Below, piece by piece: positions 16,937-50,144 of a stretch of 64,000 nt of DNA. Both the position numbers and the translations under genes were made by a program. This DNA is from Auanema rhodensis (Eukaryota > Animalia > Nematoda), in contig OZ059899.1 in NCBI GenBank assembly GCA_964057225.1, positions 6,510,001 through 6,574,000 on the forward strand. The letters are read 5' to 3'. The notes beneath the pieces were generated by a model that was not told the origin of the DNA, searched no databases, and was given only the letters and a program-made list of their open reading frames with translations. Each line of letters begins with the position of its first letter. Position 1 is the stretch's first letter.

Positions 16937-19881
16937 TTAATATGTCGGAGAGAAATTATTATTTGTGTAGAAGGGATATCTATAATATGGAAAATGGCAA
17001 TTAACGGGGAGTGGAGAAAGTAATGGCGATGTAGGATTATATGTATCCATGAACTTAATTTCGTCGAAATTATTATAATTATTTGCTTTCAAATAAGCAT
17101 TAAAACCGTAATCGTCTATGGATTCGAAGGAATTTATAGCTCTTGGTACGTACATCGGTTGGAAGTATAAAGAGCGTAAGTCATATGGTGAATACGACAA
17201 CTTCGGCCATTCCTGCATTTGATGTGGATAGTAGTTTTCCCATAAAGACATTGTTTCCTTTTGTATTTCCTCCATTCTGAGTTGTTCAAATACTTTTCTT
17301 GGAATAGTGATTGACCTTTCATCACCATCCTCCATCAGATCATACGTTTTTGGACGTCCAGGTACTCTTGATTTGTACAATTCTGCTTTTGGTTCGAATC
17401 CTTTGGCAACATGTTCTCCATATGTTTTAGCATTTGATTCACTCTGCCATACCTAAAAACAAACAGAAGATTTAATCGATTCAAAAGATGTAGGGGGGGG
17501 GAATAGAGAATTTCAGTTTATCCTTTCTTGTGTCACTGATGGCTAAATCAGCTGTCGTTGAATTTTCTTTTCATGGGTCAAATCACGATATCTCTTTTTC
17601 TTTTTATAGAAAATTGTAAATCGAGCTTCATAACATCATCGTTTTAGTTTTGAAGTATAACCATGGACCGATAACAATCTGTAAGCAGACGTTGGATGAG
17701 AGAAATGTGGCTGCGATACACAGCAGCACTATAACATGCCCAGATCAAAGTGCAAACTAGTCTTTGGAAAACCCATACGAGATACGATGCAAGAATGTTA
17801 TACTCGCAGGCGCGTGTTTCTCTCGTTGTCTTCAGTCAGGATAATTCTGATTTGCAAAGCTGACAATGAAGAAAGAAAGTAATGATTCTAAGTGAATTAG
17901 AACCAGCGGTAACCTAGGACCGCAACTCCTGGTGTTTAACCAATTCTGAGTCAGATTTTATAAAGAAAATTAAAGTGTTTTAAGAAATATAAGTGTATTC
18001 AGAGGATTAGAATGTTGTGATTGATTAAATATATGCTTCCTTGTGTTTCGCCTAACAGGGTTGTACGTCATCATAAATGATGCAAAAAGGGTCATAAAAA
18101 CTGCCAGTGATTCATATCTAATTGAAAAAAGACTAGAAAAATCCTTTTTTTCGAACTTGATCGGAAGTTTCAAAAACTTTGCTGCAACTTTTGGAAGTTT
18201 CATCATATATAACCCAAATAATGTTTAAGAATCGAACATCTTTTTGTCGGTGAATCTCAACTAAGAAAAAGGGAAAATGTTCAGATTCAGAAAAGGCTCA
18301 CGTATAGACTACAAATCAATAAAAACGAATATATGAATGGAATTGGTTTGAATAGAAAGATTTACAAACCTTCTTTGAAAAACTAATCTCTCTCTTTGAT
18401 CTTGGAATAGCAAGACGGGGATCTCTGAAGTTTTGGTAATCAAACAAAGAAGAATACGGATTGATTGGATTAAGATTTTGACCATATGTAATAGTAACAT
18501 TATCACGATCTAAATAAGAAATAGTATATCTTGTAAATTTAATCTTTTCATTATACCGTAGTATATTTTTCCAGAAAATGGAAAGCGATAAGCGATTCCT
18601 TTGGAGATAGGAAGAGGTACATCAATATCACCTTCCACTCCATCATTTCCTCCTACGTCATGTTCAACCTGAAACAAACTTATTTTATCTGCTTTTTTCC
18701 TGAAAAATGTCGTACGCCGAATCCAAATGTTCCTTGGTAAGGATTACACATTGGAGGTTTACAGCTGATGGGGGAATACGTTTTGGCCAGTTTACCAAGA
18801 GGTAATGTTGGTTGAATATCTAAAAAAATATTTAAAACGTTCTATATATCATTAAGTATATTAGATAATATTAAAAAATATATATAATGTTTCTATAAAT
18901 ATATATATTTAATCTTACTTCTATTATAATGAAGTGATGGATCACTCATTAATTTAACAAAATCATTTTTATCCAAATCAAGCATATTGACAGGTTGTGC
19001 CATATAACCAAACTTTGTAGTTGTGTCATGAATTCTGAAATACAAAATAAATAATCTGTATTTATTCGAAAAATAAAATAAAAAATAATCTGCGTTCGGG
19101 GGGAATCGAACCCCCGTCGAATGCTTGGAAGGCATCCATGCTGACCATTACACCACGAACGCTACATATCGGAAAGTTCAAATTAGTTTTATATCAAGAT
19201 AATCTCTAGTTGAAGAATGAACGCTCAAAGATTTAATTTTTGTCTGCTAAGTGGTTGCAAAGAGACGTCAAATAATAATAGTTATTTTTGAATATTAATT
19301 CGAAATGAAAGTAACCTGTTGAAAAATCTTCCGTAAATATCTAATATACCCCATGATGGGACAGCTATGTTTAAATCTCCTCCGATATGCTGAAATGATA
19401 ATTCAGTATTGAATTGATGATGAAAATCCTTACTCGAGATATAGATGGATCGAGGTCAACACCTCCACTATATTGATTATGGAATGGGAAAACTGGCCAG
19501 TAGTTACCAGGATGAGATCGACCCGGCAATGGTTCTTGTGGGCCTAGAGGGGATTGATATGATTCAAATGGTTTACAAATATGTCGTTTTACCTGGAATG
19601 GAGTATGGAGTTGCCTTAAGAATAGGTCGTTTCCGTGGAGGCTCAGCATCAGTATCAGCTGCTTGCTTCATACGTTTATAGAGAAAATCATAATAACTCT
19701 TGTTATTGTCGTCGTTGGGATCTTCATCATCATTATTTGTCTCTTCCTCATCTGATTCCTTAATAAATCCCTCTATTTCATCTGCTGATCGTTTGTTTCG
19801 ACTGAGAGCAGCATCAACGTTTGCAAAATGTGAATGTGCCACATTCAGAAGAACAGCAAGCAGCAGCAACGAATGTTTCAT
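16937..19881 (-). CDS. Uncharacterised secreted nematode protein, paralog A (signal peptide, furin sites, Tyr/Pro-rich tail)
   Basis: In-frame splice chain: MKHSLLLLAVLLNVAHS..RNKR..; GPQEPLPGRSHPGNYWPVFPFHNQYSGGVDLDP; HIGGDLNIAVPSWGILDIYG; FGYMAQPVNML..SDPSLHYNR; QPTLPLGK..CKPPMCNPY; DGVEGDIDVPLPISKGIAYRFPFSG; TITYGQNLNPIDP..RSKR; last exon 17452-16937 joined in phase 0. Exon-by-exon similarity to paralog B supports the model. Confidence 0.85.
17860..17959 (+). ncRNA. Candidate box C/D snoRNA-like RNA, antisense within the last intron of paralog A
   Basis: Terminal stem CTGAC (17860-64) / GTCAG (17950-54) encloses box C-like ATGAAGA (17866-72) and box D CTGA (17946-49). Internal hairpins are present, and TTTT follows at 17956-59. 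Confidence 0.45.
19091..19162 (-). tRNA. tRNA-Gly (anticodon TCC), intronic
   Basis: GCGTTCGTGGTGTAATGGTCAGCATGGATGCCTTCCAAGCATTCGACGGGGGTTCGATTCCCCCCGAACGCA: complete cloverleaf, A and B boxes, and a downstream oligo-T terminator. Confidence 0.98.
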
Positions 19882-35414: not shown

Positions 35415-35770
35415 TTATATATTAACTTTGTATAATTTGTTCTATTAAGACGGGATTGATCTCATTCAACAATTAATATGTACAATTTAACAACTAATCT
35501 TGATAAATTTCAGTAAAAGATTTTATGTTAAAAATATAATTATACATTATTTTATATTACAATGTAAAACGTCTCAAAACAATTGACGCATTCACAGCAG
35601 CACCAATAAAAGGAAAAAAAAGAAAAATGACCTATAAATCATCACAAAAAAAAGAAGAAGGTATATAGTTAAGAAATATAATTTGCGTAAAACATAAGAC
35701 CTGAGCATCCAAAGGTACCGTATAGAATGAAGGCAATAGATATGGTGCATCCGTTTCCAATAGATTCGAT

Positions 35771-38314
35771 TTATAACAGTTCGTTATAAGGAGTACATTG
35801 AATTTCGTCGTCATCTTCCAGATGTACTTCACTAAAAATATATTTAATTATTATAATTATCTAAAATTTATTTATTTCTTACAAATTTTCTACTCCATCC
35901 TCTTCATTAGCGGCATCCATGAGAGCCTCGTATTCCTCAATACAGTATCGATCCCAGTCAGTAAGCTCACGGCCACTTTCATCTTCTACACGAGCCTCAG
36001 AAACTACAAACAAATATTATTATTTAAAAAATATGTTATACTCAATACCTTCATTGGTTTCTTGATGATAGAACTTTCTCCAATTCACTAACGAGTTGAA
36101 GAACTTCGGTGCCATTTTGTTTCCTTTCAAGTCCGATAGCTTGAAAAGAGTTTTATTTTTTGGGTTAACTGCGTCAATTAACTGAAATGTGAAAATTAAA
36201 TAATTTGAGATAATTAACTATTATTTCTTACATGACAAACAACGTCTTCAAACTTTAAAGTTTCAATTCCTTCCTGAGATAAAGCTTCAATGATAAAATT
36301 ATGGAAATATTCCATATCGTAGAAAGAAATTTGTCCATCCCCATCAAGATCAAGGACTCTGAACCAGTATTCAGCACTGAATTAAATTAAAATTACAAGA
36401 TTTAATTAATAACACGATAAGTTATTACCTCATAGGATGAGTTTTATCCTCATCAGCAAGTAAAAAATTAGTATATTCACTAATATCAATAAAATCTGGA
36501 GATTTCTTAATTTTTGAAGAAGGTCTGATAGCTCCCGAAAAGATACGGTTAACAATAACACGTGGAATAGCTAAAATAAAATAAAAATAATAATTTAATA
36601 AAATATTTATAAAAGATTACCGTATTTGCCATGTCTCTCCATATCAGCGCGGCTAATTAGCATATCATGATTACTATCAAGTTCCCAGAAATTACAATAT
36701 ATAACATAAAAATGTTCATAACTAAAATTAAAATTAAATATAATACAGATAGAATACAGTATATTAACCTGAAGTAGCGGAAACTTTTGTTAATATCTTC
36801 ATAAATTTGGAGATCACGAATTTTTTCTAGGAGATCAGATTTTCTAATATCTTGTGCTGTGATTGAATTAGCCCACGGCCTATTAACATTCCAAAAAATT
36901 CGAGAAACAACCTGAAATATTAAAATGATGCTCAAAGTTTTAAAGAAAAAAAAACAAATGTTAACATACCACATCGCAATATTTGTCATGGAATTCAATC
37001 GAAGAGCGATAAAACTCCAAACCAGGATGACTATGAATAACATCCATGACAAGTGGAACGAAATGGCTTCGTGTTAACTGACTTCCAGCACCAGCAGTCA
37101 GTGTATACACAAATCTAAGAAAAAAAATAGTTGTACGTATTCTAAATTAGTGTTCGATTACCTAGCTGCTTCATCATGGGCTATTCCCGTCATGGCGCGC
37201 CAGAAGGCTGTGAAGTCCATTTGAGTAGCTGAGCGATTCTGAAGCATATGTATATAACATTTAGAATATGGTTATATATTTTATACCTCGTAACGAACTA
37301 AAGCATCAAAAAGAGGTTTCTTCCAGAATAAAGGAATACCAGCAGCTTCACAAACATCTCCAATATTTTCAAAATCACACTGAAACAAGTATGCTCAGAG
37401 TATGCATATCGGAAAAGATTCAATTTTTTTTATTTCCCTCTTGTTCATTAAAATGATCAGTGGACTAATATGATCAAAGACAACAGACACTAGCATTGCC
37501 AGTGATCCACCACATGTGTGTAATAACAGCAGAAATCACAAATCTCTGCTTAGAGGCTGATCGATGATTTCTCAATGTATATACTTCATTCTTATTTTTC
37601 ATATTGTATTGTTCTACATCCACAAAAGGACAATGTTAAAGATTAAATCCAACTTACAACTTGATTAGGAAGCGACCTGAACACTTCACAGACCCGTTTA
37701 AGAGCAGCATCGTTATCATATTGAGAAACTGGTTTTCCTTGAGGGAAATGGAATCTTTAAAAGATATTCGTTTAAAAATTGAAAAAGATTAAAGTTACTT
37801 TGGATAATTGATTAATGAACGAGGCTTTTGAGATCGTGGAATGAATCCATCATATTCCTTTTCAGGTTCAGCAGAACTATAATATTATACATAATAAACA
37901 TAAGCTTTACGACGACTTACAGAGATTCGTCTAATAGTCTGAAGCTCTTACTTGCATTCAAACCTCTAGCTAGTTTAGAGTTATCAAGTGAATTAGAACT
38001 ATCAGATGTTCCAGAAAAGCTGTCTTCTAGACACAGCTAAAACAAAATAAATAAATATTATAAAAACTATAACGTTAACAAAGTTACCTTTGCTATATGC
38101 CCATTCGTATAAGCTTCATCCACGGAATCATTAAGAAGTGAGCTATAAATTAATGATTTACTGTATATTTTTCGTATATATTAAATGAAATTTTAGAAAA
38201 AAAAAGATTATCCTACTTTGACTCATCTTTCGAAACTGTAAAATATGCAAATGCTGAATTTGGATCAAAAAATATAGCATTCGTAGTATATGGAGGAGGA
38301 CATACTAAGGTCAT
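35771..38314 (-). CDS. PP2A regulatory subunit B'' (PR72/PR130, PPP2R3 family), EF-hand core, multi-exon
   Basis: RFHFPQGKP; [15 protein letters not shown]; HDEAARFVYTL; HPGLEFY; [13 protein letters not shown]; EEDINK-like YEDINK; FWELDSNHD; [11 protein letters not shown]; [23 protein letters not shown]. Stop at 35771. The 5' start of the shortest isoform is uncertain. Confidence 0.92.
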
Positions 38315-39905
38315 TGACTTTCGGCGAGCCACCACAGTCTGTATGTCTAGACGGCGTGGTTTTCGCCTCCGATATGGCGGACGACGAGAATATTTATGGT
38401 AACCAACCAGCTTTTACTCGTCGTATATAGATCAGATCACATGTAGTGTTGGAGATTTGAAAAAATTATAAATGCAATTGGATTATGTTATATTGGAGAG
38501 TGGAATATCATTCAAATACCCGTCATGAAACTTTTTCAAAAATTTCAAGAGGAATATGGAACAGATTCAATATGTAGGCTTGTTGAACTATACAAGCTAG
38601 CTGGTTTGATAATAACGGCAGCGAAGAGGAAACTGGGCAGTTCTAACAAAGCTATCGAAAGCATGAGGCTGTTCTTCAGCGATTAGGCGCTTAGTTTAAT
38701 GTATGTTTTCATTCGTGCACCTAGTGACGCCATTTGTCAGTTCCTTTGTATCTCTTCTTCTCTTCTACCTATCGTCAGCCTGTGATCAACTCTATCGACC
38801 TACGCTTCTCGGTTGAGCAGTCAGCAAATTATCACCCACACATCTCACAGAAAAAAATAAAATATTCCGTGCATTATCGAAAAACAGTTTTCATGTTATG
38901 ATTGAATTATACAGAAATTGTTTTAAAAAAATATAAAAAGGAAAATATTCATGAGCAATCTTTTTCAAAATATTCATATTGAAACATACCGATTATTGGC
39001 ACTGTGCGGTGAATGTAAAGCAAGCTTCTTGAAATCACGCGTAAGACTAAACATCAAAATTTGCAAAACAATATTCAGAAAGGAATCATCTTACTTTGAA
39101 ACAGGTGTCGCGTTCAAATCAGCAGTTTCATTCCATGACTGATTACCCTGAAAAAGAAAAAAGAAGTAATATGTTAAATGAAAGGATAGTCAATATCTCA
39201 ATTTTATTCAATTTATTATATATTATATTTATGATTGTGAGCTATATTGAAGTTAGTATTGGCTTACGTATTTCCGTCTTAATAATTTCCAGACACGAAT
39301 ATTGCGTGGAGGAAGAACAAGCTCTCTAGTCATAGTTCCCATTATATGAAAACCGTTCTCACGTAGAGCATTGCCCATGAAGTATTGGTCAGTAGTACGA
39401 CAACAATCAACACTTTTCAGAATCACAAAGCTTGATTCGCCAGTTTAGAACATTAATTTTGGAAATATATAGCTAAAGGACTTATTGAAATTCATAAATG
39501 TCAGCTAGAAACAATAGAATAAAGCCCAGATACAGCTGAAGCAGCAAAACAACTGCTTTTCTCAAATCTGCTTCATTTAACCATGCTCCTCCCATCTCGT
39601 TTTCATGATGCTTTGGTGATAGATTTAAGGAGGGTGGAGCTATGTTTTTCCACACAAAATACCCGAAAACAACAAGCAACGTATAGTGTAATAGCATACT
39701 CTCCTCATCTAATAACATTCCAGGTTTCGTCCAGCTGTGTGACCGGCTGACGGACTCGAAGGCGGGAGCGAAGACAAGGGAAAGAAAAAAAAAGTATAAG
39801 TTAAAAAATATTTTTTTCCACTCATACTTATACTTTTTCTGTCGACCGATAGTCATTGATTGATTAGTTCTCTTTTCCCTCTAGGCATAAATGAAATAAA
39901 CTCAC

Positions 39906-40085
39906 ATTTTTTGATTTCCTTTGACTGTCAAATACTTTACGAACAATAGTTTCTAAAAATTGGCCAAGTGAGCGTGAACGATTTTCCGTAGCTTGAGCCT
40001 TTTTAGGAAATCGCTTAGGCTTCCGTGTTGCTAGCATAGAACATTCACAAAGCACCGCATCAGGTGGACGGCCGACGTCCTTCAT
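39906..40085 (-). CDS. Candidate alternative first coding exon of the PP2A B'' gene (60 codons)
   Basis: MKDVGRPPDAVLCECSMLATRKPKRF...SQRKSKN ends at a consensus phase-0 donor AAT|gtgagt. Confidence 0.55.
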
Positions 40086-40300
40086 TAGAAGGACAATTCT
40101 ATATCGGAGTACCGAAACACTAGATAAATACTTTTGAATATATGCAATGAAGCTGAGAAGTAAGTAAAAAAAGAGCAAAAGAAAAACAAACGATGAAAGA
40201 GATAGGTAGCGGAAAGAAAACGAAAGTAGGAGAAAAAACAGTCAAATGAGGTCTCAGCTAACCTAAGTAAACAATCTCGAGTCTAAACTATCTAATTACT

Positions 40301-40338
<38 letters not shown>

Positions 40339-43300
40339 ATACAATATACTAACTACATGTAGAAGATGAATTATTCTTATTGACGACGTCATCGGATAAA
40401 AGAATCAAAACTGGTCAAAATATAAAGATGCAGAAGCAATCGAAGAAGATGATGATGACGATGATGAAAAAGAAAAGGAAGGAATGATAGTCTGAGACTG
40501 TTGTCGTATATTAGCCATCGGTTGGGCCTTTTGCTGCTTAGATGATGGTCAACAATAGATATATAAAGAGAGATAGAGAAGGAATAAGTGAGTGAACACA
40601 AAAAATAGGAGAAGAAAACGAAGGATTGGAAAGAAACAAAAAAAAGAAAGAAAAAATCAACTACAACAATAAAAAGAAAAAGCTGGAGCATAGAATCGAT
40701 TAGCTAAACCGGGAGTGTAAAATGGCTTATCCTTACGCATGTGGCATCTATTAAGAGCAAAAGATTCAGGAGACCTAGCTATAGTGTTGATATTACAATA
40801 GGAAATAGGGAAAAAAGAAAAAAAGAAAAAAGTCTTGGAGAACATGATCCTAATCATGGTATGGTAGCAAATATAGACTTAGTTTGTTCCGTATATGAAT
40901 GATTAAAGTATTTACTGAATTTTATAGTAAATGATAGGAAAAACCATACGTTGACCTATGCTATAATAATCGTATACGTATGAAACATCTTAAGAAAACC
41001 GGAGTTGTATGTGTGTAGAAATGAATGTATTGTCCTCTATGCTACTCCACCCCTTTTCCAACATCGCCATTTCAACCCTATACCACACATATACCAAAAG
41101 TGAGACTAAGAAGTAGATAGAATAGATATACATACATATAATAAACAAAAGTATTCTCTACCCCAGTAAATATAGTATTTGAATAGAGCGCCTGTCCGAG
41201 AGAAGAGCTTTGATGAACCCAATATTCATATTATTATACGGAAATATCTATAGCAAATAGGTAATGTCTCAAAAACTATTTTCAATTTCCTAAACATTAT
41301 GTTTAAGGTTTGATTAATGAACATTGTTTTTCTACAAATTACTATTTCTAAACAAGTTTCCCTTTTTTGATGAAAAAACCGCTGCATATGGTGAGTAAGT
41401 CTAAATGGATAACAATAGTAAAGGAAATGGAGTTCTATTTAACTATTTTAAAAGCAACCATTTCGAGCATGTTCTATAGAATTTCTACCAAAAAAAAACT
41501 TTAAAATGTATTGTAGAAGGAGAGAGGTAAAGATAGAGAGAGAGAATCGAAACATTCCCATTATTATGACTATTTTGAGTCAAAACTTAAGATATGGAGA
41601 AATACAGATAAGAAATGGAAGATTGAGTGAAAAAGAAAAAGAGAGAGAAAGAGAGAGGAAGAGAGAGGAAAAAGTGTTTATGGAACATTAAAATGTGTCT
41701 CAGTACAAAAGACGTGTTAAACTTATATCTATGTTTTCATGAGGATACATATAAAGGACATTATTAAGATTATTTTAAAATAATAATAGTGTAGAATAAA
41801 AAATGAAAAAAAGGACAAAACTACAAGGAAATAGCATTGCAAAGAGAATGAAGAATAGGGAAGAGAGGAAAACTAAGAAGAAGATCATGAATGTAAAGAA
41901 CAAGGGAATCTAGCCAGGTGAAAGTGAGAGAGATATTAGAATATAGCAACAATAATTGAGAGTAAAATAGAAAGAGAGGAAAACAGAATGGAGGGAAGGA
42001 CAGTGGGGAAGAAGATGTGCACAACAGTCTCGTTCTCCTCATTGTCATCATCATCGACGAATCGACACAACCGGCTCCTTTCTTCGTTCTCTCCTCTGGA
42101 GTCAACTATCTTTATCTATCTCTAAATGTTGCTCATCCAAAGGAAGAGAGGCTCATTGTTTGCACAACTTGCACTAATCACTAATATGCTAATATCAGAG
42201 AAGCAGAAGCGAGACTGCAAAGACGATTCAGGTAGAAGAAATAAATGAAAAATGACCATTTTGTATGAAAAGAATACACAGAAGACATCCTCCCCACACA
42301 CATTCATATAGGTCTCCTGCATAACTCATAGCCAACGACTCACCGTTTCAAAAGAAAATGTAAAAAAGAAAAAGTTATTCAATACAAAGGAAAAATATTT
42401 GAAAACAAATAAGCTTCCTATAATATCGTTTACCGAATATTTCGAAGAAAACCAAAATTTCAATAAATTTAAACTGATATTCATCAAAACATAATATTTT
42501 TGGAATCACAAAGCTTCAGTACAGATAGTTTCAGAAAAAAACGATAAGCGTAACCAAGTTTAAAAGATTGTTCCAAAAATGATAAAAGACCTTGAAAGAC
42601 GAAAAAACACAATTATCACTCAGCAGGCTTCAAATTGTTTATAGCTGTGATTACGAAGAATAGAAATGGTTGAGACATGAATGTTGCGATTCCAGTTATA
42701 AATAGACAGAACGTTTTATTAATATTTATGGTATTCTATTGATAAAAAACGGCTTTGGATAAAAAAATATTTTTGATAGCAGTGGTCAGAAAAAAACAAT
42801 TTTGATTTCATGTTGACAAACGCTGACAAATCAATTAAATAGAACATCGACCTTATTTAATTAGGAAAAATGGCAACCCCAAATTAACTGGCCACACACT
42901 TTCAAAGTAAAACATCGCCATTTCTGTATATTAAACAGGAATTAACTTTTGCAACATAAAATAGTACAAGAGAAATTAATTAAGATGTTTTAACTCATTG
43001 CTATCAAAATAAAGTCAGAACAACAAGCTTTTTAAGTTACAAGCAGAAGTGCAAAGCCAATTCAAGAACAATAGCAATGAATGATTTCGACGATTGGGCT
43101 GGATAAAACTTAAGCGGTGTTTGGCTGAGGCTAATTGGCTTTCTAGCTAAGGTTCATAAGCCTTGCGCACATCAAATGCTAATAAAATCATTAACAACGC
43201 TATGAAAAGACGCCTGTTCACGAGAAAATGATAAAACAAGAACTAGTGGAGGAGAATAGATTGAAAACTTCAGAATAGTAACTAATCAATTAACTAATAT

Positions 43301-44553
43301 GCGATCACATGAATTAACTATCACCTAGATAGTATATATGTTTTTTTAATTATCATACTTAAGTCATGTTATACAAATAAAAAGAAAACCAATGAAAGAA
43401 TAGCAAAAAGGACAAAGAGCTGCCGTACGACGAAATCAGACGCGGTTCTTCCATACTGTCGAAAAAAGTTAGTCTCATTCATAGTTACTCAGTCGCTTTC
43501 TTGACATTCTACAGCTATTCTGACTCTTACTCTCTCTCTCTATCTTATTTTTCTTTCTCTTCAAACTTCGCCTTCTACAATCTCTCGATCACATTCAGTT
43601 TCTACGTGAAGAACAATGCCACAGCTGCCTATATGAAGGAATACCATGGTATCATATCACAAAGAGTGAAAAAACGAGAGAAAATAAAAGAATATGATCA
43701 ATAATGAAAACTGTCTTGTCCAGCTACATCATGGCTGCATCAGAATAACCCAATACGCGAAATACATAAAGATAATTCTTCAAAGAGAAAGGACGAGACA
43801 AAAAGAAGTGAGCGAGATGCGCTCCTACTAATGGAGTGCAAATACTTGGCTGAAGCTTTAGGAAAACCACATAGCTATAGTTCTTCAGCACAGAATAATT
43901 ATTAGAAATATGAGAAATAATTATCAAAACAACATTTAATAAAATTTTTTTTTAATCATATCATAGATCAAAATGAAGCTGATCCTTTTGAACAATGATT
44001 AGAATGTGAGCATATGATGCCATTAGAGTACAAGTATCAATGCATCTTTTCATTCTCGCTTCATCATTAAGGCACACAAGCTCCATTCTATTATCATATG
44101 GAAGTAGGTAGTAGAAAAGACAAACATATCTGTTATGCATTTAATGTGAGACCTAATGTATCTTTAACGCATCTATTCAGATGTAACTTTCGCGAAAACG
44201 GTTTAATTTTCACATAAAATTGCGAAAAATTCGAATTGATCAGAAGGTTCAAAATATCAGAAAACAAAAAAAAGAAAAGAACTGTTCTATATATTACGCG
44301 GGTTTTATTCTCATGATATTTAGCTTTATTGAAGATGTCTTTTCTCGCAAATCTTGAGATTACTTATTGTAAATTCAAACAATAATGTGAAAAGCATTAC
44401 CCATTCTTGTAAAAAAAACATGTATAGATTTGTGTAGCAATTTTAAAGTTCAGAAAAAAGAGATCAACTTCTATATATCCCGCTTTTTCCGCATTTTCCT
44501 GAATGCTTAGAGGGAAAATATCTAGATTACTAGAATCTCATTCAGTTGCTCAC

Positions 44554-44742
44554 GTTCGACGAATGAGAACACGACCAACCAGAAAACGGGACTGAAGTCA
44601 TTGACAAGCAAAAAGCACAAGACAGGGCCTCTTCGAATATCTCAAGAGCAAAGCGGACAAATTGCTTAGATTCTTCACAAAATATTCTACATAGGCAAGC
44701 CAATTTTCTTCCAAACCTTTCACGAGCCAGCCCCATAGTCAT
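44554..44742 (-). CDS. Candidate alternative first coding exon of the PP2A B'' gene (63 codons)
   Basis: MTMGLARERFGRKLACLCRIFC...SHSSN ends at a phase-0 donor AAC|gtgagc. Confidence 0.45.
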
Positions 44743-45512
44743 TATTAACGTGAGATTACGCAGACCAAAGGGCAGGCGTCTTCATTTCGGAAAAATTTTC
44801 CCTTTTTTTCATAAATTCGCTTCCTTTTTCTTCAACTCAGACATTTCTTAGCCGATGCTACATGTACTTTTGGAAATCATAAAAGACCATTACAGGTCAT
44901 TGTCGTCGAACTCGAACAATTCAACAGATCAACTATTGATATGAAAGGCTTCAAATTCTAGACAAGTTGAGATGGGGATATGAAGCTGATAAAATACATA
45001 GACGAACTCTCGTTTTTAAACTATTTCACAAGTTGAATCAATTGCGGACAGACACCCACTCTTGAAAGCCATGTCACTAATAGTTCTTTAAACGATCGAG
45101 TGTCCAACTGAAAAGAAAAAGGAACAGCTGCCACCTGCAGCATCATATATATAAAAATATATATATACATATGTATATATGTATATATAAAATATATTAA
45201 AGTCATTTTCAGACTATAAACGTTAATATATAATTAATTGCAAAAAAACCAAATATAAAATAGTTATAGTTATAATAAATATAGAATCTATAGAAATACA
45301 TGAATTCGCTATATGGATTTTCTACACATATTGCCCATTGCGATCTCTTCCTACAGGCTATTATCATAACAAGTTTCTATCAATCTCGTATTCGTTCAAG
45401 AATTTTATAAACCTTTGCATTCAATATAGTTAAAGTAAATCAACTCGCTTTTTATATATTAATCATATATAGTATAAATAGTCCAATAAAGTATACATAT
45501 AAATGAACTAAC

Positions 45513-47858
45513 CTTTTGTTGAATTTCAAAAACTGTTGTTTCGTGGTCTGGTGTCTTGGTATGATGAGAACCCAAATCGATATGAATAACAGGTTTAGCA
45601 CGGAATACAGAGCTCTTAGGGCTCATAGAATTTACAGTTGAATTATTAACAGTTTCTTGAGGAGTCACATTCAGAAGTTGAAGGGTTGGTGTTCCCGGTC
45701 GTTTTTCGAATTCTGTAATTCGGGAAGCAACACTTCCGGTTGAAGGAACTGGGAAATTAGGAGATGTACGTAAAAGTCCTGATCTGGGATACAATCCGTT
45801 TACTTGTTGCTGTTGCTGCTGAATTTGGTGAAGCTGTTCTTTAATATTATGTTTCGGTTTTGGATGTGGAAGTCCCGTAGGAACTTGATAAATTGAAGAT
45901 GTTTCACTTGCAGAATCCGTGGGGCTAGGTGAATGCAAAACACGATAATGGGCTGGCAAAGTTGCAGAATGATATCTTGGTGGACTAAAAGCATGTTCAT
46001 CTGTTGGAAAACGAGCGCATCCACCAAGCCGTCTGGCACTGTGAGAATATCCTGTCGACCGAACACCACTATTACCAGCTAGCTCACGAACAGCATTATC
46101 TAATTCTGAGAAATTAGGTGAAGAGACAATTCCTGGTCCAGAAATGAAATGTGTTGTATTTCCACAATTGAAGTTAGAATTGGCTTCATTCATATAAATT
46201 TCTCTGCGTGCGGCAAGTGTTGTTCGTCCATCGTTAAGCAAACTCTCGGAAGCGTTTCTAACATTCGTCGAACCGGTAGTAGGTTCTTGTAACATTTGCA
46301 ATCGTTCAGCAGCTGTTAAAGATGGAACACGTTGAATTGTAGGAGATTGTGGTCTAGAAGCCACTGTAGCAGACCAAAAAGTATCAATGGCACCAGAGCG
46401 ACGATGATCAGGTGCTTCAGATGCACGTCTTTCTACAGCTTTAGCTAAAATAGAAGACTCAGGAACATCATGATGACTGGATGATTTCGATAGCATAGGT
46501 CCTCGACGAGGCAAAGTAGGGGCTCCTAAACTGGTGAAACCATTATAGTATTGAATACCTTCTGTTTCTGAAGGCAAGTTGCGGAATTTTTCCTTCATTT
46601 GAGCAAAGGAATTTCGCCATTCGTTTGTAGAACGATTCATGTCAGCGTCTTCATCCAGATCAAGTACAGAATTCAATAAAGAATCTAATTGAGATATATC
46701 AGTAGAATGAGGCCACTGCAAGTTGTTGCGTAAGTTCGAGGGCAAGTGATTGTTATTCGTCTCAGTGTTGCTGCTCAAGGTTTGATATTGAACCGGATGT
46801 CGATAATTCAATTCGGAATCTTGAACCAAGCCTGTAGGAATGTTCTGGTAGTAGTGAGCAGCAATTGCTGGCTGCGAATTGACAGAATTCGCTGGGGCGT
46901 TGATCTCGTTAGCCTGAGGTGGGAGAACACGTTGGAAATTCTGAGCCTGCTGCTGTTGCTGGTGATAGAACTGATGCTGTTGCGGCTGCTGCTGGGCGTG
47001 AGAAGGGAGAGGACCAACGGACTGTGGCGATTCGTAAAACGTTGGGCCAACAGGTGACGATCGATACTCGCTGTGATATGAGCTGCTTAGCCCAGCCTGT
47101 TCCCTGGAGGGGATACTCCAGGCTTCAGTTGTAGGAAGAGAATAAGTGCGACGACTAGCAGCTGGTGATGGCTTAGGCAAAGTGCCAGTGCCGGTTGCAG
47201 AGTTCTCGTGAAGAGGAGCACTACTGCCAGCTGGATATGATGACGATAAGGTTGATAAAGTTCCAGACGAAGACGCAATAGATGTGAACGATCTTTGAGG
47301 ATTTGAGGATGAACCCTCCGCCTGTGTCGCGTCGGTCTTGAGATGCTTGTTAGCTTCGTTGTAGACAGACTGTCGAGCCGAGGGATATCGTTGTAGGAGA
47401 TTCAGAAGAGCTGAACTACTGGAGGGGGAGCGCTCTCTCAGGTGCTGTGTGAAGTTGTGGGTGGAGCCAGGCGAACTAGAAGATGGTCCAGAAAATCCGT
47501 TATTCTCACGTATACTTGAAGGAAAATTGATGTAGTGAGACTGTTGCCTTGGAGGAGGTGAGGGTTGCTGGATCCTATCCAATTTTGAATGACCAGTCGG
47601 CTCATTATTCATTCCGATATTTGTTGTAGAATATTCATTAAAATGCTGATCATCTACATACGGTCTTCTTCGATAAGAAGTAGACAAGAATTCCAACGGC
47701 ATTACTCTTCTTGTGTCCGCACTCTGAGATCTCGGTCGATACTCATCTCCTCCTAAGTTATAATTTTGACGAACTTCTGACGGAAACACAACCCCTGAAG
47801 GAGCAGCGGGCGGAACATCATAAACACCTGTTCCATACGGCTCCGCTCGATGATACAT
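45513..47858 (-). CDS. Large first coding exon (782 codons, disordered S/P/Q-rich), probably the N-terminus of a long PR130-like PP2A B'' isoform
   Basis: Uninterrupted ORF. The ATG at 47858 is preceded by an in-frame TGA and a trans-splice-type acceptor ttttccag (~47899). The exon ends at a phase-0 donor AAG|gttagt. The next recognisable minus-strand coding exons belong to the B'' gene and accept phase 0. Coding status is near certain; the gene assignment is inferred. Confidence 0.75.
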
Positions 47859-48774
47859 TCGATATCAGTCGGATAACCTACAGGATTATGGTTTCTCTCT
47901 GGAAAAAATTAAAAAGTTGCAATCCTCGAATATATGTGAAAAAGACGAAAACAATGGATAGTAATAACGATGATGATCAAGTTAGAAGGAAGATAAGCAC
48001 ATGTTGTGAAACCTATCAAAACCGCGACACTTCAAACACTTGAAAAACATAAGTGGAAGGACTAGCTGGCAGGAAATCAAGTCATAGATATATGCTGTCA
48101 ATATTTGAAATAAAACGAAAAAGAACTTAGGCTAATAATGATTACTAGGTAAGAACAATTCCTTTCAGAATTTTAAGAAAAAGAAAATAATTGCAAGAAA
48201 GCAAATGATATCTAGGTTGTAAGGAAAGAAAACTGAATACTTAAATCAATGGAATGTAGCATCACTTGTGTTCAATAGTTATATTCTCGAACTGCCGAAC
48301 TGATACTACTCAGAGAAATTTAAAATTAGACGAAATACAATGCACTTTACATAAGAATTCATAGCTATATTATTGTTCAGTGTTAAAAAAAAGTATTAGA
48401 AGAAAAAAATTTAAATTTCAAATGATACAATGATTACTAGTTTTCATATAATTTTTTCATTTGATTATCAGAAACAAAATCCAAGTTTCGCCCGATAAGT
48501 AGCCTAGTTTTCTATGAGAAATTAACAAGCGCCATTATCGATTAAAACAAAAAAAAGCAAAAACCCAACATAGAAAATCAGAAAAATCAACAAACGCACG
48601 GGTGATTAGCTATTATAAAATGCTCAAAAACCACCCTAAATAGTGAAAATCTAAGAAGTGCAAGAAAAAAGAAGTCAAATGAACTACAATCAGACATTTA
48701 GATAAATGTTGAAACAAAAAAAGAAAATAAAAGACGTGGGAAGGATATAAAACAAGGTCTTGAAGGAACATCTG

Positions 48775-48970
48775 AGATCTTTCGGGCTCAATGGGCCCAG
48801 CCTGTCTTAGGCCTTATGCCTCTCCTATTCGCCACGACCGCGAGGCCCTGAGCCCGGACAACGAGACTTTCCATAGGCCGGCCGGGTATTGTTACAGCGT
48901 GCCTAAGGCGAAGAAAGTGTCCGCTGTTTACGCTGGCCGGCAGGATAGGTCGCGCCAGCTACTTGCAAAG
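48775..48970 (+). ncRNA. Candidate structured non-coding RNA of unknown class
   Basis: GC-rich island in very AT-rich DNA, with TATAAAA at 48746-52 about 30 nt upstream. Several nested stems are present and their G-U pairs work on the + strand (see findings). Confidence 0.5.
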
Positions 48971-49346
48971 AAGATGGGAAGAGAACAGAGCCAACAGCCA
49001 AAAGTTGATTACAAGAGCACAAAAACAAAAAATTGTTGAGATTTAAAGAAAAAATACTCAAATTTAAAGTTAATATGAACAACAAGTTTGAAAAAAGGAA
49101 AAGAAAGAGAATGAGTAGAGAGATGAGCAAAAGAAAAGGAATAAATGAATCTTTAACATGAATTACTAGTACATAATCCTAAAACAAAATTCAAATTTCA
49201 GAATTAATACAACTCAGTCTATCAAAAATCATTTTTTTTCTACAAAATATGAACTTTTAACAATTAATTTGATTTGTCGACAGTTACGTTAATCGCTATA
49301 GGTGTAACAATTAGATTCTGGCCCTAAAGTCACCTTGACCAATACT

Positions 49347-50144
49347 TCAAATCATATTACAACTCTTTGTCAACTATTTCAGTCCAATAGCCATATGATT
49401 AAATGTAGAAATATAAATACATAAAAGCATACTAACTAACTTGCTCACATTTTGAAATTAAAAAATAAATTAATATAAACAAAAATAAACTAACTATGAA
49501 ATGTACAGGTGAAAGAAGACTGCCATCTCCATCAGATCCTGGGCTTCGCAATGATTTAAAAATAGGAGAAACGAGTAATTTAACTCTAAAATAATAAAAA
49601 TATAATTAAGGAGTTAAATATAAAAAACCTTTTATGCCTTATTCTCTCTTCTAAAACTGGTGTGCTAGTAAGAGATGTCTCGAATTCCTAGATGGAAAAA
49701 ATTAATTGCATATCAAAATAAATAAAAAATCAACTAACATCTACTACATGTCGCCATCTTGTACGACCAGGAGATTTTGGAGGAACTGTTATATACATAA
49801 AATTAAAAAAGAAATGCTTCTAAACACTTACGGGATGTTTGACCCTTACAATTGTCTCCATTAGGAAACATGATCGTCGTATCACAGTTTCTGAAAAATA
49901 GATATAATTTAGTTTAAAATTTCTGAAATATACTTACTTAGCTTCAATATTTATACGTAAAAGATGAATGATTGAAATCTCCTCCTCGAACACCTTAATC
50001 GAGTCAGGGGTGATCTGAATAATAGAAAAAAATAAAATAAATATTCAAAAACTTTAGACTGAAAAATGATAAAAAAGGAACCTTAAAATAAGACTGTCGT
50101 AGACAATCATTTTTAATTTTTCCCGCGTTATCCATTATCGACAT
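49347..50144 (-). CDS. Small hypothetical protein (~150 aa, 6-7 exons)
   Basis: In-frame splice chain MSIMDNAGKIKNDCLRQSYFK|ITPDSIKVFEEEISIIHLLRINIEAK|NCDTTIMFP..|LPPKSPGRTRWRHVVD|EFETSLTSTPVLEERIRHK|RVKLLVSPIFKSLRSPGSDGDGSLLSPVHFI with canonical splice sites. The last exon is uncertain. Confidence 0.65.

What the first reader, a model, noticed from the sequence alone, without database searches (positions are those of the whole stretch)
48746..48970. TATA-preceded, GC-rich, two-domain structured RNA candidate with a pseudoknot and a telomere-template-like motif
Seen: a ~200-nt GC island begins ~30 nt after TATAAAA (48746-52). Domain 1 is a multibranch hairpin: TTCGGGCTCA 48781-90 pairs with TGAGCCCGGA 48849-58, GGGCC pairs with GGCCC, and there are sub-hairpins GCC..GGC and TCGC..GCGA. 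Domain 2 can fold as an H-type pseudoknot: TGTCCGCTG 48918-26 pairs with CGGC(A)GGATA 48938-47, the U-rich loop is TTTAC, GCTGGC 48932-37 pairs with GCCAGC 48954-59, and the domain is closed by CGGGTA 48883-88 / TACTTG 48960-65. GCCTAAGGC (48901-09) is left single-stranded inside. G-U pairs fit the + strand. Established: the order closing helix - template - P2 - U-rich loop - P3 is the telomerase RNA core topology, and GCCUAAGCC would template nematode TTAGGC (8 of 9 bases match here). Inference: this is an unannotated ncRNA, and a telomerase-like RNA is one hypothesis. Against that, no CR4/5 or H/ACA domain is visible downstream, the pseudoknot has no A-rich strand, and the perfect template match is only 7 nt.
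Basis: partly seen in the sequence, partly recalled or inferred. Interest (0 to 1): 0.8.

Follow-up and report, generated by a model that had tools for sequence, protein, structure and literature searches.

The report
Conserved regulatory element, not telomerase RNA
The GC-rich island is a species-specific hairpin insertion lying next to a ~140-base non-coding element; the element's 15-base core and nearby TATA box are kept across many nematodes upstream of a PP2A B'' gene exon, so it is most likely a locus-specific promoter or regulatory module and not a telomerase RNA.

Summary
The island (48781-48965) is real, single-copy and GC-rich (0.61 against 0.31 for the window). The genome is a nematode's: it has TTAGGC arrays and 43-51 nt introns.

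The telomerase reading fails:
- GCCTAAG reads GCCTTAG in the closest orthologue (Auanema sp. JU1783).
- None of seven orthologous elements has a template-like 7-mer.
- The window itself holds 24 such 7-mers.

The proposed fold also fails. Domain 1 (48781-48858) is absent from every orthologue, so it is a lineage-specific, strongly folding 78-nt insertion. In Auanema the pseudoknot's P2 and its closing helix break. Only the P3 hairpin survives, through G-U pairs.

What is conserved is 48858-48996 (79% to Auanema). Inside it lies an invariant 15-mer, GGTATTGTTACAGCG (48885-48899). It occurs in 8 of 9 orthologous loci (Auanema, Caenorhabditis bovis, Haemonchus, Necator, Dictyocaulus, two unnamed species). 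It always has the same orientation and lies 0.8-2.3 kb upstream of the large first coding exon of a long PP2A-B'' isoform. A same-strand TATA-like box sits about 50-60 nt before it.

There is no Rfam match, no snRNA-type promoter and no thermodynamic signal. One low-depth RNA contig covers 48854-49041.

Best reading: a locus-specific TATA-plus-core promoter or regulatory module, possibly firing a short + strand transcript. An independent ncRNA gene remains possible.

The parts
48746..48752 (+). TATA-like box (TATAAAA). It lies 139 nt before the conserved core, or 61 nt if the 78-nt Domain 1 insertion is discounted.
   Evidence: Strict [TA]ATAAA[AT] hits on the same strand lie at -58 (Haemonchus, Necator), -54 (L024) and -49 (C. 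bovis) from the core.
48781..48858 (+). Domain 1: a lineage-specific, GC-rich, imperfect hairpin (about 23 bp of stem, 18-nt loop). It is an insertion relative to all orthologues.
   Evidence: Fold z -3.65. Absent from Auanema and all other orthologous elements. Single copy in the genome. Present unchanged in a DNA run of a closely related organism (X9 contig 47975-48856).
48858..48996 (+).
   Evidence: 78.7% identity over 141 nt to L010:8636-8500 (Auanema sp. JU1783) in collinear position. Indels of 3 and 2 nt rule out coding.
48885..48899 (+). Invariant 15-nt core GGTATTGTTACAGCG.
   Evidence: Exact in 8 of 9 orthologous upstream regions, always in the same orientation. It is the only k-mer of 11 nt or more shared by at least 4 of them. 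Single copy in the own genome at up to 2 mismatches for the 18-mer.
48901..48909 (+). Template-like GCCTAAGGC. It is not conserved.
   Evidence: Reads GCCTTAGGG in Auanema. No template-like 7-mer on this strand within -200..+500 of the core in any orthologue.
48932..48959 (+). It is the only proposed helix kept in Auanema.
   Evidence: 10 pairs; the three C-to-U changes all give G-U or U-G pairs on the + strand. It is not kept in L023.
48854..49041 (.). The only RNA-run contig over the island (188 nt, depth 2.7, strand unknown).
   Evidence: run X10 only; absent from X11 and X12.
49245..49375 (.). Second non-coding block shared with Auanema. It holds TGTAACAAT (49303-49311), the inverted complement of 9 nt of the core.
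   Evidence: The inverted 9-mer at this distance is seen only in the window and Auanema.
45513..47858 (-). Large first coding exon (ATG at 47858, GT donor at 45512) lying 1026 nt from the core. Its orthologues are often annotated fused to PP2A B'' EF-hand domains.
   Evidence: An acceptor-like TTTTTTCCAG sits at about 47900, where the RNA contigs end.
49494..50016 (-). Five small 5' exons of a highly expressed transcript. They splice across a ~10.3-kb intron to an exon ending at 39146 in the B'' gene, so the island lies inside this intron.
   Evidence: Joints with CT..AC ends that skip 43-51 nt. The loose end maps to 39118-39146. B'' EF-hand_13 is found at 36660-37052.

Best explanation
The island is a composite. 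Its left half (48781-48858) is a young, lineage-specific hairpin-forming insertion with no conserved role. Its right half (48858-48996) is a locus-specific cis-regulatory module of the PP2A B'' locus. The module is a 15-bp core (GGTATTGTTACAGCG) held at a fixed distance of about 50-60 bp from a TATA-like box. It sits in the first intron of the short isoform and about 1 kb upstream of the large first coding exon of the long isoform. Proposed mechanism: a sequence-specific factor binds the core, TBP binds the TATA-like box, and together they form a small promoter. The TATA orientation points transcription into the core on the + strand. That would give a short, low-abundance non-coding transcript antisense to the short isoform's 5' exons. 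The useful output would then be control of promoter or isoform use at this locus, not a trans-acting RNA. Shown: conservation, synteny, orientation, core-to-TATA spacing, single-copy status, and absence of coding, Rfam and snRNA-promoter features. Inferred: the start site, the binding factor and the regulatory output.
For: The core is exact in 8 of 9 orthologous loci, in one orientation, 772-2255 nt upstream of the exon, and is the only shared k-mer of 11 nt or more. The locus is collinear with Auanema. Strict TATA-like hits on the + strand lie at -49 to -58 in Haemonchus/Necator, L024 and C. bovis, and at -61 in the window once Domain 1 is removed. There are only 1-4 such hits per 800 nt and none on the opposite strand at that place. 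Conservation footprints differ between lineages: -109..+44 and -38..+33 in strongylids against -27..+111 in window/Auanema. That pattern suits a cluster of binding sites around a fixed core. No stable or conserved RNA fold appears outside one species pair: single-sequence z runs from -1.4 to +1.2, and the strongylid alifold z is +0.4. There is no Rfam hit in the window or in six orthologous loci. The own U6 and MRP genes have a PSE-like box at about -60 plus a TATA at -30, and the element lacks such a PSE. The first run of 4 or more T's downstream lies at about 49233. The RNA contig is of low depth and occurs in one of three runs.
Against: No start site is mapped, and the strand of the RNA contig is unknown. 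A sharply bounded, invariant 15-mer is longer than most single binding sites, and invariant cores flanked by fast-evolving sequence are also the hallmark of RNA guide or functional sequences. The 12-mer from the core is not enriched in the genome (13 copies against 13 for the control), so no known recurrent factor motif is implied. In the window/Auanema pair all 8 substituted paired positions keep + strand pairing, and the consensus fold beats column shuffles on + (z -2.7 to -2.9) but not on -. The left edge of conservation (48858) and of the RNA contig (48854) coincide about 30 nt before the core, as a transcript 5' end would.
Confidence: 0.5

Rival explanations
1. An independent non-coding RNA gene on the + strand. 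It would be TATA-driven, start about 30 nt before the core, and be roughly 150-400 nt long. The invariant 15 nt would be its functional sequence (base-pairing or protein-binding), and Domain 1 would be a species-specific 5' hairpin expansion.
For: TATA orientation and spacing. The conservation edge and the RNA contig edge both lie at about -30. The + strand-specific wobble-compatible changes plus one compensatory G-C to C-G change, with alifold z -2.7 to -2.9 on + against -0.5 to -0.7 on -. The invariant core flanked by variable sequence.
Against: No Rfam family. No PSE like those of the genome's own U6 and MRP genes, and no nearby terminator. Thermodynamic z-scores are unremarkable in all eight species. 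No structure signal in strongylids, and no common fold across seven species (-2.5 kcal/mol, no covariation). RNA evidence is one 188-nt contig at depth 2.7 inside the intron of a transcript with exon depth 145-192, so it may be pre-mRNA. The structure test rests on only two sequences.
Confidence: 0.27
2. An RNA element acting in the host pre-mRNA on the minus strand. It would be an intronic signal within the 10.3-kb intron of the short B'' isoform, or within the leader of the long isoform, that controls splicing or isoform choice.
For: The island lies inside that intron. The element's orientation relative to the gene is fixed in all species. The minus-strand reading CGCU|GUAACA resembles a weak 5' splice site (read from the sequence).
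Against: The minus strand shows no structural signal, and the Auanema substitutions would give A-C mismatches there. No spliced contig uses the site. Ten invariant intronic bases after a weak donor would be unusual. The TATA-like box reads correctly only on the + strand.
Confidence: 0.1
3. Telomerase RNA, with GCCUAAG as template and an H-type pseudoknot.
For: The genome has TTAGGC arrays. A 7-nt template match lies 3 nt after the conserved core. According to PMC12921731, telomerase RNA is not yet known outside part of Caenorhabditis.
Against: The template is changed in the closest orthologue, although the flanks are invariant. No template-like 7-mer lies within -200..+500 of the core in any of seven orthologous elements, including C. 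bovis. The 7-mer is at chance frequency in the window. P2 and the closing helix are not kept. No H/ACA domain is present. The element is antisense to its host intron, unlike terc-1 (PMC12921731). A better template word (UAAGCCUAA) exists in another intron 385 kb away.
Confidence: 0.01
4. No function. On this reading the island is a neutral GC-rich patch or the relic of a mobile element (MITE or SINE).
For: Domain 1 has 8-10 bp inverted ends, is lineage-specific and could be such a relic.
Against: Both halves are single copy. The right half is conserved in synteny from Auanema to Caenorhabditis and the strongylids.
Confidence: 0.03

Closest known systems
Caenorhabditis telomerase RNA (terc-1 / TR_C2, in an nmy-2 intron; Takeda et al. 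as cited in, and Klapproth et al. 2026, PMC12921731)
   Same: A nematode with TTAGGC telomeres. The candidate lies inside an intron of an expressed gene, is a few hundred nt long, and has a template-like word near the 5' part.
   Different: The terc-1 template core TAAGCCT is kept in nearly all species, whereas here the word is only 7 nt and is lost in every orthologue. terc-1 is sense to its host intron, has no TATA box and ends in an H/ACA domain. This element is antisense, is TATA-linked and shows no H/ACA fold.
Conserved non-coding elements and TATA-containing RNA polymerase II core promoters of nematodes
   Same: A short block of invariant sequence in syntenic non-coding DNA next to a regulatory-type gene. 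A TATA-like box sits at a fixed distance, the flanks turn over between lineages, and no stable RNA fold is present.
   Different: The 15-bp core is unusually long, sharply bounded and invariant over the Caenorhabditis-strongylid-Auanema span. It is not a recurrent genomic motif, and no factor is known for it.
snRNA-type small RNA genes (U6, RNase MRP) of the same genome
   Same: A TATA-like box about 30 nt before the presumed start, and a GC-rich body in AT-rich surroundings.
   Different: The own U6 and MRP genes carry a PSE-like box near -60 and end in a T run. The element has neither, and it matches no Rfam model.
Promoter-associated antisense or divergent non-coding transcripts
   Same: A low-abundance transcript overlapping a regulatory module, antisense to the host gene, with no coding potential.
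   Different: Such transcripts are usually not conserved in sequence. Here the first ~140 nt are 79% conserved between genera, with hints of + strand pairing.

Membership tests
Telomerase RNA | A template of more than one telomere repeat (at least about 8-10 nt of a permutation of GCCUAA) | tested here: not met
   Only 7 nt (GCCUAAG, 48902-08) match; the next bases break the repeat. Words of that length occur 24 times in the window.
Telomerase RNA | The template is the most conserved part in orthologues | tested here: not met
   GCCTTAG in Auanema. No template-like 7-mer within -200..+500 of the core in seven orthologous elements. The conserved core itself contains no telomere permutation.
Telomerase RNA | A template-adjacent pseudoknot supported by covariation | tested here: not met
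   P2 has 2 mismatches plus a 2-nt insertion, the closing helix loses 3 of 6 pairs, and there are no double changes. No common fold across seven species.
Telomerase RNA | A metazoan or nematode 3' H/ACA domain | tested here: inconclusive
   By eye only. ACA triplets occur at 48985-87 and 48994-96, but no two-hairpin H/ACA arrangement fits and nothing comparable is present in strongylids. No snoRNA predictor was available.
Telomerase RNA | Association with TERT and a requirement for telomere maintenance | not testable with these tools
   Needs RIP and genetics.
snRNA-type / RNA polymerase III type-3 small RNA gene | A proximal sequence element at about -60 together with a TATA box at -30 | tested here: not met
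   The own U6 and MRP genes have a PSE-like ..ACGG.. box and a TATA. The element has the TATA only, with AT-rich sequence where a PSE would be.
snRNA-type / RNA polymerase III type-3 small RNA gene | A T-run terminator at the end of the RNA body | tested here: not met
   The first run of 4 or more T's lies at about 49233, roughly 350 nt after the core. No conserved T run in orthologues.
Any curated RNA family (Rfam 15) | A covariance-model match | tested here: not met
   No hit at gathering score, and nothing relevant at E<=10 over 48600-49150. No hit at the core in six orthologous loci. RNase MRP lies elsewhere.
Conserved cis-regulatory / promoter module | Conserved sequence in syntenic position and fixed orientation relative to the gene | tested here: met
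Conserved cis-regulatory / promoter module | A core-promoter element (TATA) at a conserved distance | tested here: met
   -49 to -58 in three independent lineages, and -61 in the window after discounting Domain 1. No strict match in Auanema; variants only in L022 and L023.
Conserved cis-regulatory / promoter module | A mapped transcription start or factor occupancy | tested here: inconclusive
   One unstranded 188-nt contig starting at 48854 in one of three RNA runs.
MITE / SINE | Many genomic copies | tested here: not met
   One copy each of the whole island, Domain 1 and Domain 2.
Protein-coding exon | Reading frame kept between orthologues | tested here: not met
   Indels of 3 and 2 nt inside the conserved block, and no conserved ATG. 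The 82-aa ORF has only a sub-threshold Pfam hit.

The most novel reading that the evidence does not exclude
The conserved half is the 5' part of a so far undescribed non-coding RNA shared by rhabditid and strongylid nematodes. It would be TATA-driven and antisense within the PP2A B'' locus. Its invariant 15-nt core would act by base-pairing or protein binding, for example to set the isoform choice of the B'' gene or to act on another target in trans.
Probability: 0.25. Interest if true: 0.6.

Novelty: new member of a known kind. Interest (0 to 1): 0.3.

Why it matters
Telomerase RNA is still unknown outside part of Caenorhabditis, so a true candidate would have been important; this one can be set aside. 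What remains is a sharply bounded, invariant 15-base core that is tied to a TATA box and kept at one locus from Caenorhabditis to the strongylid parasites. Nematode non-coding DNA normally evolves fast, so this degree of conservation is unusual. The core gives a precise handle for mutation or reporter tests on how the two promoters and isoforms of a PP2A B'' regulatory subunit gene are controlled. It is a modest but concrete lead, not a new class of system.

Tried and rejected
- **Rfam.** Searched at gathering score and at E<=10; nothing found.
- **tRNA-like Domain 1.** ARAGORN found nothing.
- **RNase MRP or P idea** (the GAAAGUC-like word on the minus strand). MRP is elsewhere in the genome, and the word is absent in strongylids.
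- **miR-124-like seed on the minus strand.** It is exact only in Auanema and lost in the window and in strongylids, and no pre-miRNA hairpin is present; rejected by reading.
- **SRP-like words** (GCCUAAGG, CCAGCUACU). No Rfam support.
- **H/ACA and C/D box snoRNA readings.** No boxes in the right arrangement.
- **Coding exon or small ORF.** Frame not kept.
- **Recurrent transcription-factor motif.** The 12-mer is not enriched.
- **Complement of the core elsewhere in the genome.** None at up to 2 mismatches.
- **Metagenome scan for the 18-mer.** Seven hits, all chance matches without flank similarity.
- **Literature search for the core.** Only an unrelated primer.
- **Long-range pairing of the core with TGTAACAAT at 49303-11.** Present only in the window and Auanema.
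- **Failed look-ups.** For the Nippostrongylus, A. duodenale, C. briggsae and M. belari loci, no record was found.

Full report
**What is there**

The window is AT-rich (GC 0.31). The stretch 48781-48965 is a GC island (GC 0.61, CpG observed/expected 0.94). The island, and each half of it, is single copy in the 181-Mb assembly, so it is not a MITE or SINE.

The genome carries TTAGGC arrays. Its spliced transcripts have 43-51 nt GT..AG introns. The neighbouring protein is closest to Auanema sp. JU1783 (68% overall, 76% in the conserved part). It is therefore a rhabditid nematode.

**Context**

RNA-run contigs show a highly expressed minus-strand transcript. Its five small 5' exons (50016-49494) splice to an exon ending at 39146. 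That exon belongs to a PP2A B'' gene, with EF-hand_13 at 36660-37052 and collinearity with the annotated Auanema B'' gene.

The island lies inside this ~10.3-kb intron. It sits 1026 nt upstream of a 2.3-kb open exon (ATG 47858, donor GT at 45512). In several nematodes the orthologues of that exon are annotated as the N-terminal part of long B'' proteins. The fusion in this genome is therefore inferred, not shown.

**Is it a structured RNA by itself?**

- The 200-nt fold is not better than shuffles: z -1.64 on +, -1.17 on -.
- The conserved half alone has z -1.28.
- The orthologous pieces of seven other species range from -1.44 to +1.17.
- Only Domain 1 alone is exceptional: z -3.65, 0 of 200 shuffles.
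- Rfam gives nothing at gathering score or at E<=10.
- RNase MRP is elsewhere in the genome.

**Comparative test**

I fetched the orthologous loci through the neighbouring exon. In Auanema the whole locus is collinear. Within the island, only 48858-48996 aligns (78.7% over 141 nt). Domain 1 is simply absent there and in all other species, so it is a lineage-specific insertion of about 78 nt.

The template-like GCCTAAGGC reads GCCTTAGGG in Auanema, although the 21 nt before it are identical. No template-like 7-mer lies on that strand within -200..+500 of the core in any of the seven orthologous elements, C. bovis included. The window holds 24 such 7-mers and even four 9-mers elsewhere.

The known Caenorhabditis telomerase RNA also differs in kind. 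It is sense to its host intron, lacks a TATA box and ends in H/ACA boxes (PMC12921731).

- The closing helix loses 3 of 6 pairs.
- P2 gets two mismatches and a 2-nt insertion.
- P3 keeps 6 of 6 pairs, with two G-U.
- No helix shows a double change.
- Across seven species RNAalifold finds only a 7-bp hairpin on the invariant ACAGCG, at -2.5 kcal/mol with no covariation.

**What is conserved**

The 15-mer GGTATTGTTACAGCG (48885-48899) is exact in 8 of 9 orthologous upstream regions: the window, Auanema, Haemonchus, Necator, Dictyocaulus, two unnamed species from Logan assemblies, and Caenorhabditis bovis. It is missing in Pristionchus mayeri. It always has the same orientation (antisense to the gene) and lies 772-2255 nt from the exon. 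It is the only k-mer of 11 nt or more shared by at least 4 of the 9 regions, on either strand.

Its borders are abrupt. It is unique in the own genome, and its inner 12-mer is not enriched (13 copies against 13 for the control).

A strict TATA-like word lies on the same strand at -58 (Haemonchus, Necator), -54 (L024) and -49 (C. bovis). In the window TATAAAA lies at -139, which becomes -61 once the 78-nt insertion is removed. Such words occur only 1-4 times per 800 nt, and none lies on the opposite strand at that place.

Among strongylids conservation spans -109..+44 and -38..+33. In window/Auanema it spans -27..+111.

**RNA or DNA?**

In favour of a + strand RNA:
- The TATA orientation and spacing.
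- The coincidence of the conservation edge (48858) with the start of the only RNA contig (48854-49041).
- The window/Auanema consensus fold, in which all eight substituted paired positions keep pairing: six wobble-compatible changes and one G-C to C-G change. It scores z -2.7 to -2.9 on + against -0.5 to -0.7 on -.

Against it:
- That test has two sequences and a structure chosen to fit them.
- The strongylid trio gives z +0.4 and +0.2.
- No species shows thermodynamic stability.
- There is no PSE like those of the genome's own U6 and MRP genes, and no nearby terminator.
- The contig has depth 2.7 in one of three runs, inside the intron of a transcript whose exons reach depth 145-192. It may be pre-mRNA, truncated at the stable Domain 1 hairpin.

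**Verdict**

The telomerase RNA, pseudoknot and two-domain readings are refuted. The right half is a genuine, deeply conserved, locus-specific non-coding element. I rate a TATA-plus-core promoter or regulatory module of the B'' locus as most likely (0.5). It may fire a short + strand antisense transcript. Next come an independent ncRNA gene (0.27) and a minus-strand pre-mRNA element (0.1). The read tools were exhausted after one call each, so strand and transcript ends could not be settled here.

Noticed in passing
These are longer than the match in my island and contain the TAAGCCT core kept in Caenorhabditis telomerase RNAs. I did not identify the host gene.
   Followed up: partly
window 45513-47858 (-) with 35500-40130 (-): The 799-aa ORF is really a large 5' coding exon with a GT donor at 45512. 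Its last ~20 codons are intron read-through. Orthologues in C. briggsae, C. japonica, Parascaris, Loa and Mesorhabditis are annotated fused to B'' EF-hand domains, which suggests a long B'' isoform with a disordered N-terminal extension.
   Followed up: partly
window 49494-50016 (-) to 39146: Five tiny exons (48-92 nt) separated by 43-51 nt introns, with no obvious reading frame. They are very highly expressed (contig depth 145-192) and splice over a ~10.3-kb intron that contains the whole large exon.
   Followed up: partly
window 49245-49375: A second non-coding block shared with Auanema (73%). It contains TGTAACAAT (49303-11), the inverted complement of 9 nt of the 15-mer core. This arrangement is seen only in these two species.
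   Followed up: partly
G000:C1:6375156-6386113: A tandem array of at least 48 identical U6 snRNA genes with a 226-bp period.
   Followed up: no
G000:C8:26.31-26.93 Mb; C72:19747-19890; C104:13122-32906: TTAGGC arrays occur in both orientations, scattered over 0.6 Mb of contig C8, and on two small contigs. These may be interstitial or subtelomeric repeat clusters.
   Followed up: no
window 19091-19162 (-): A tRNA gene (68 bits), the only Rfam hit in the window.
   Followed up: no
window 42033-45160: Several short non-coding blocks between the large exon and the B'' exons are 75-84% identical to Auanema (for example 44077-44170 and 44583-44678). They may be further regulatory or UTR elements of the locus.
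   Followed up: no
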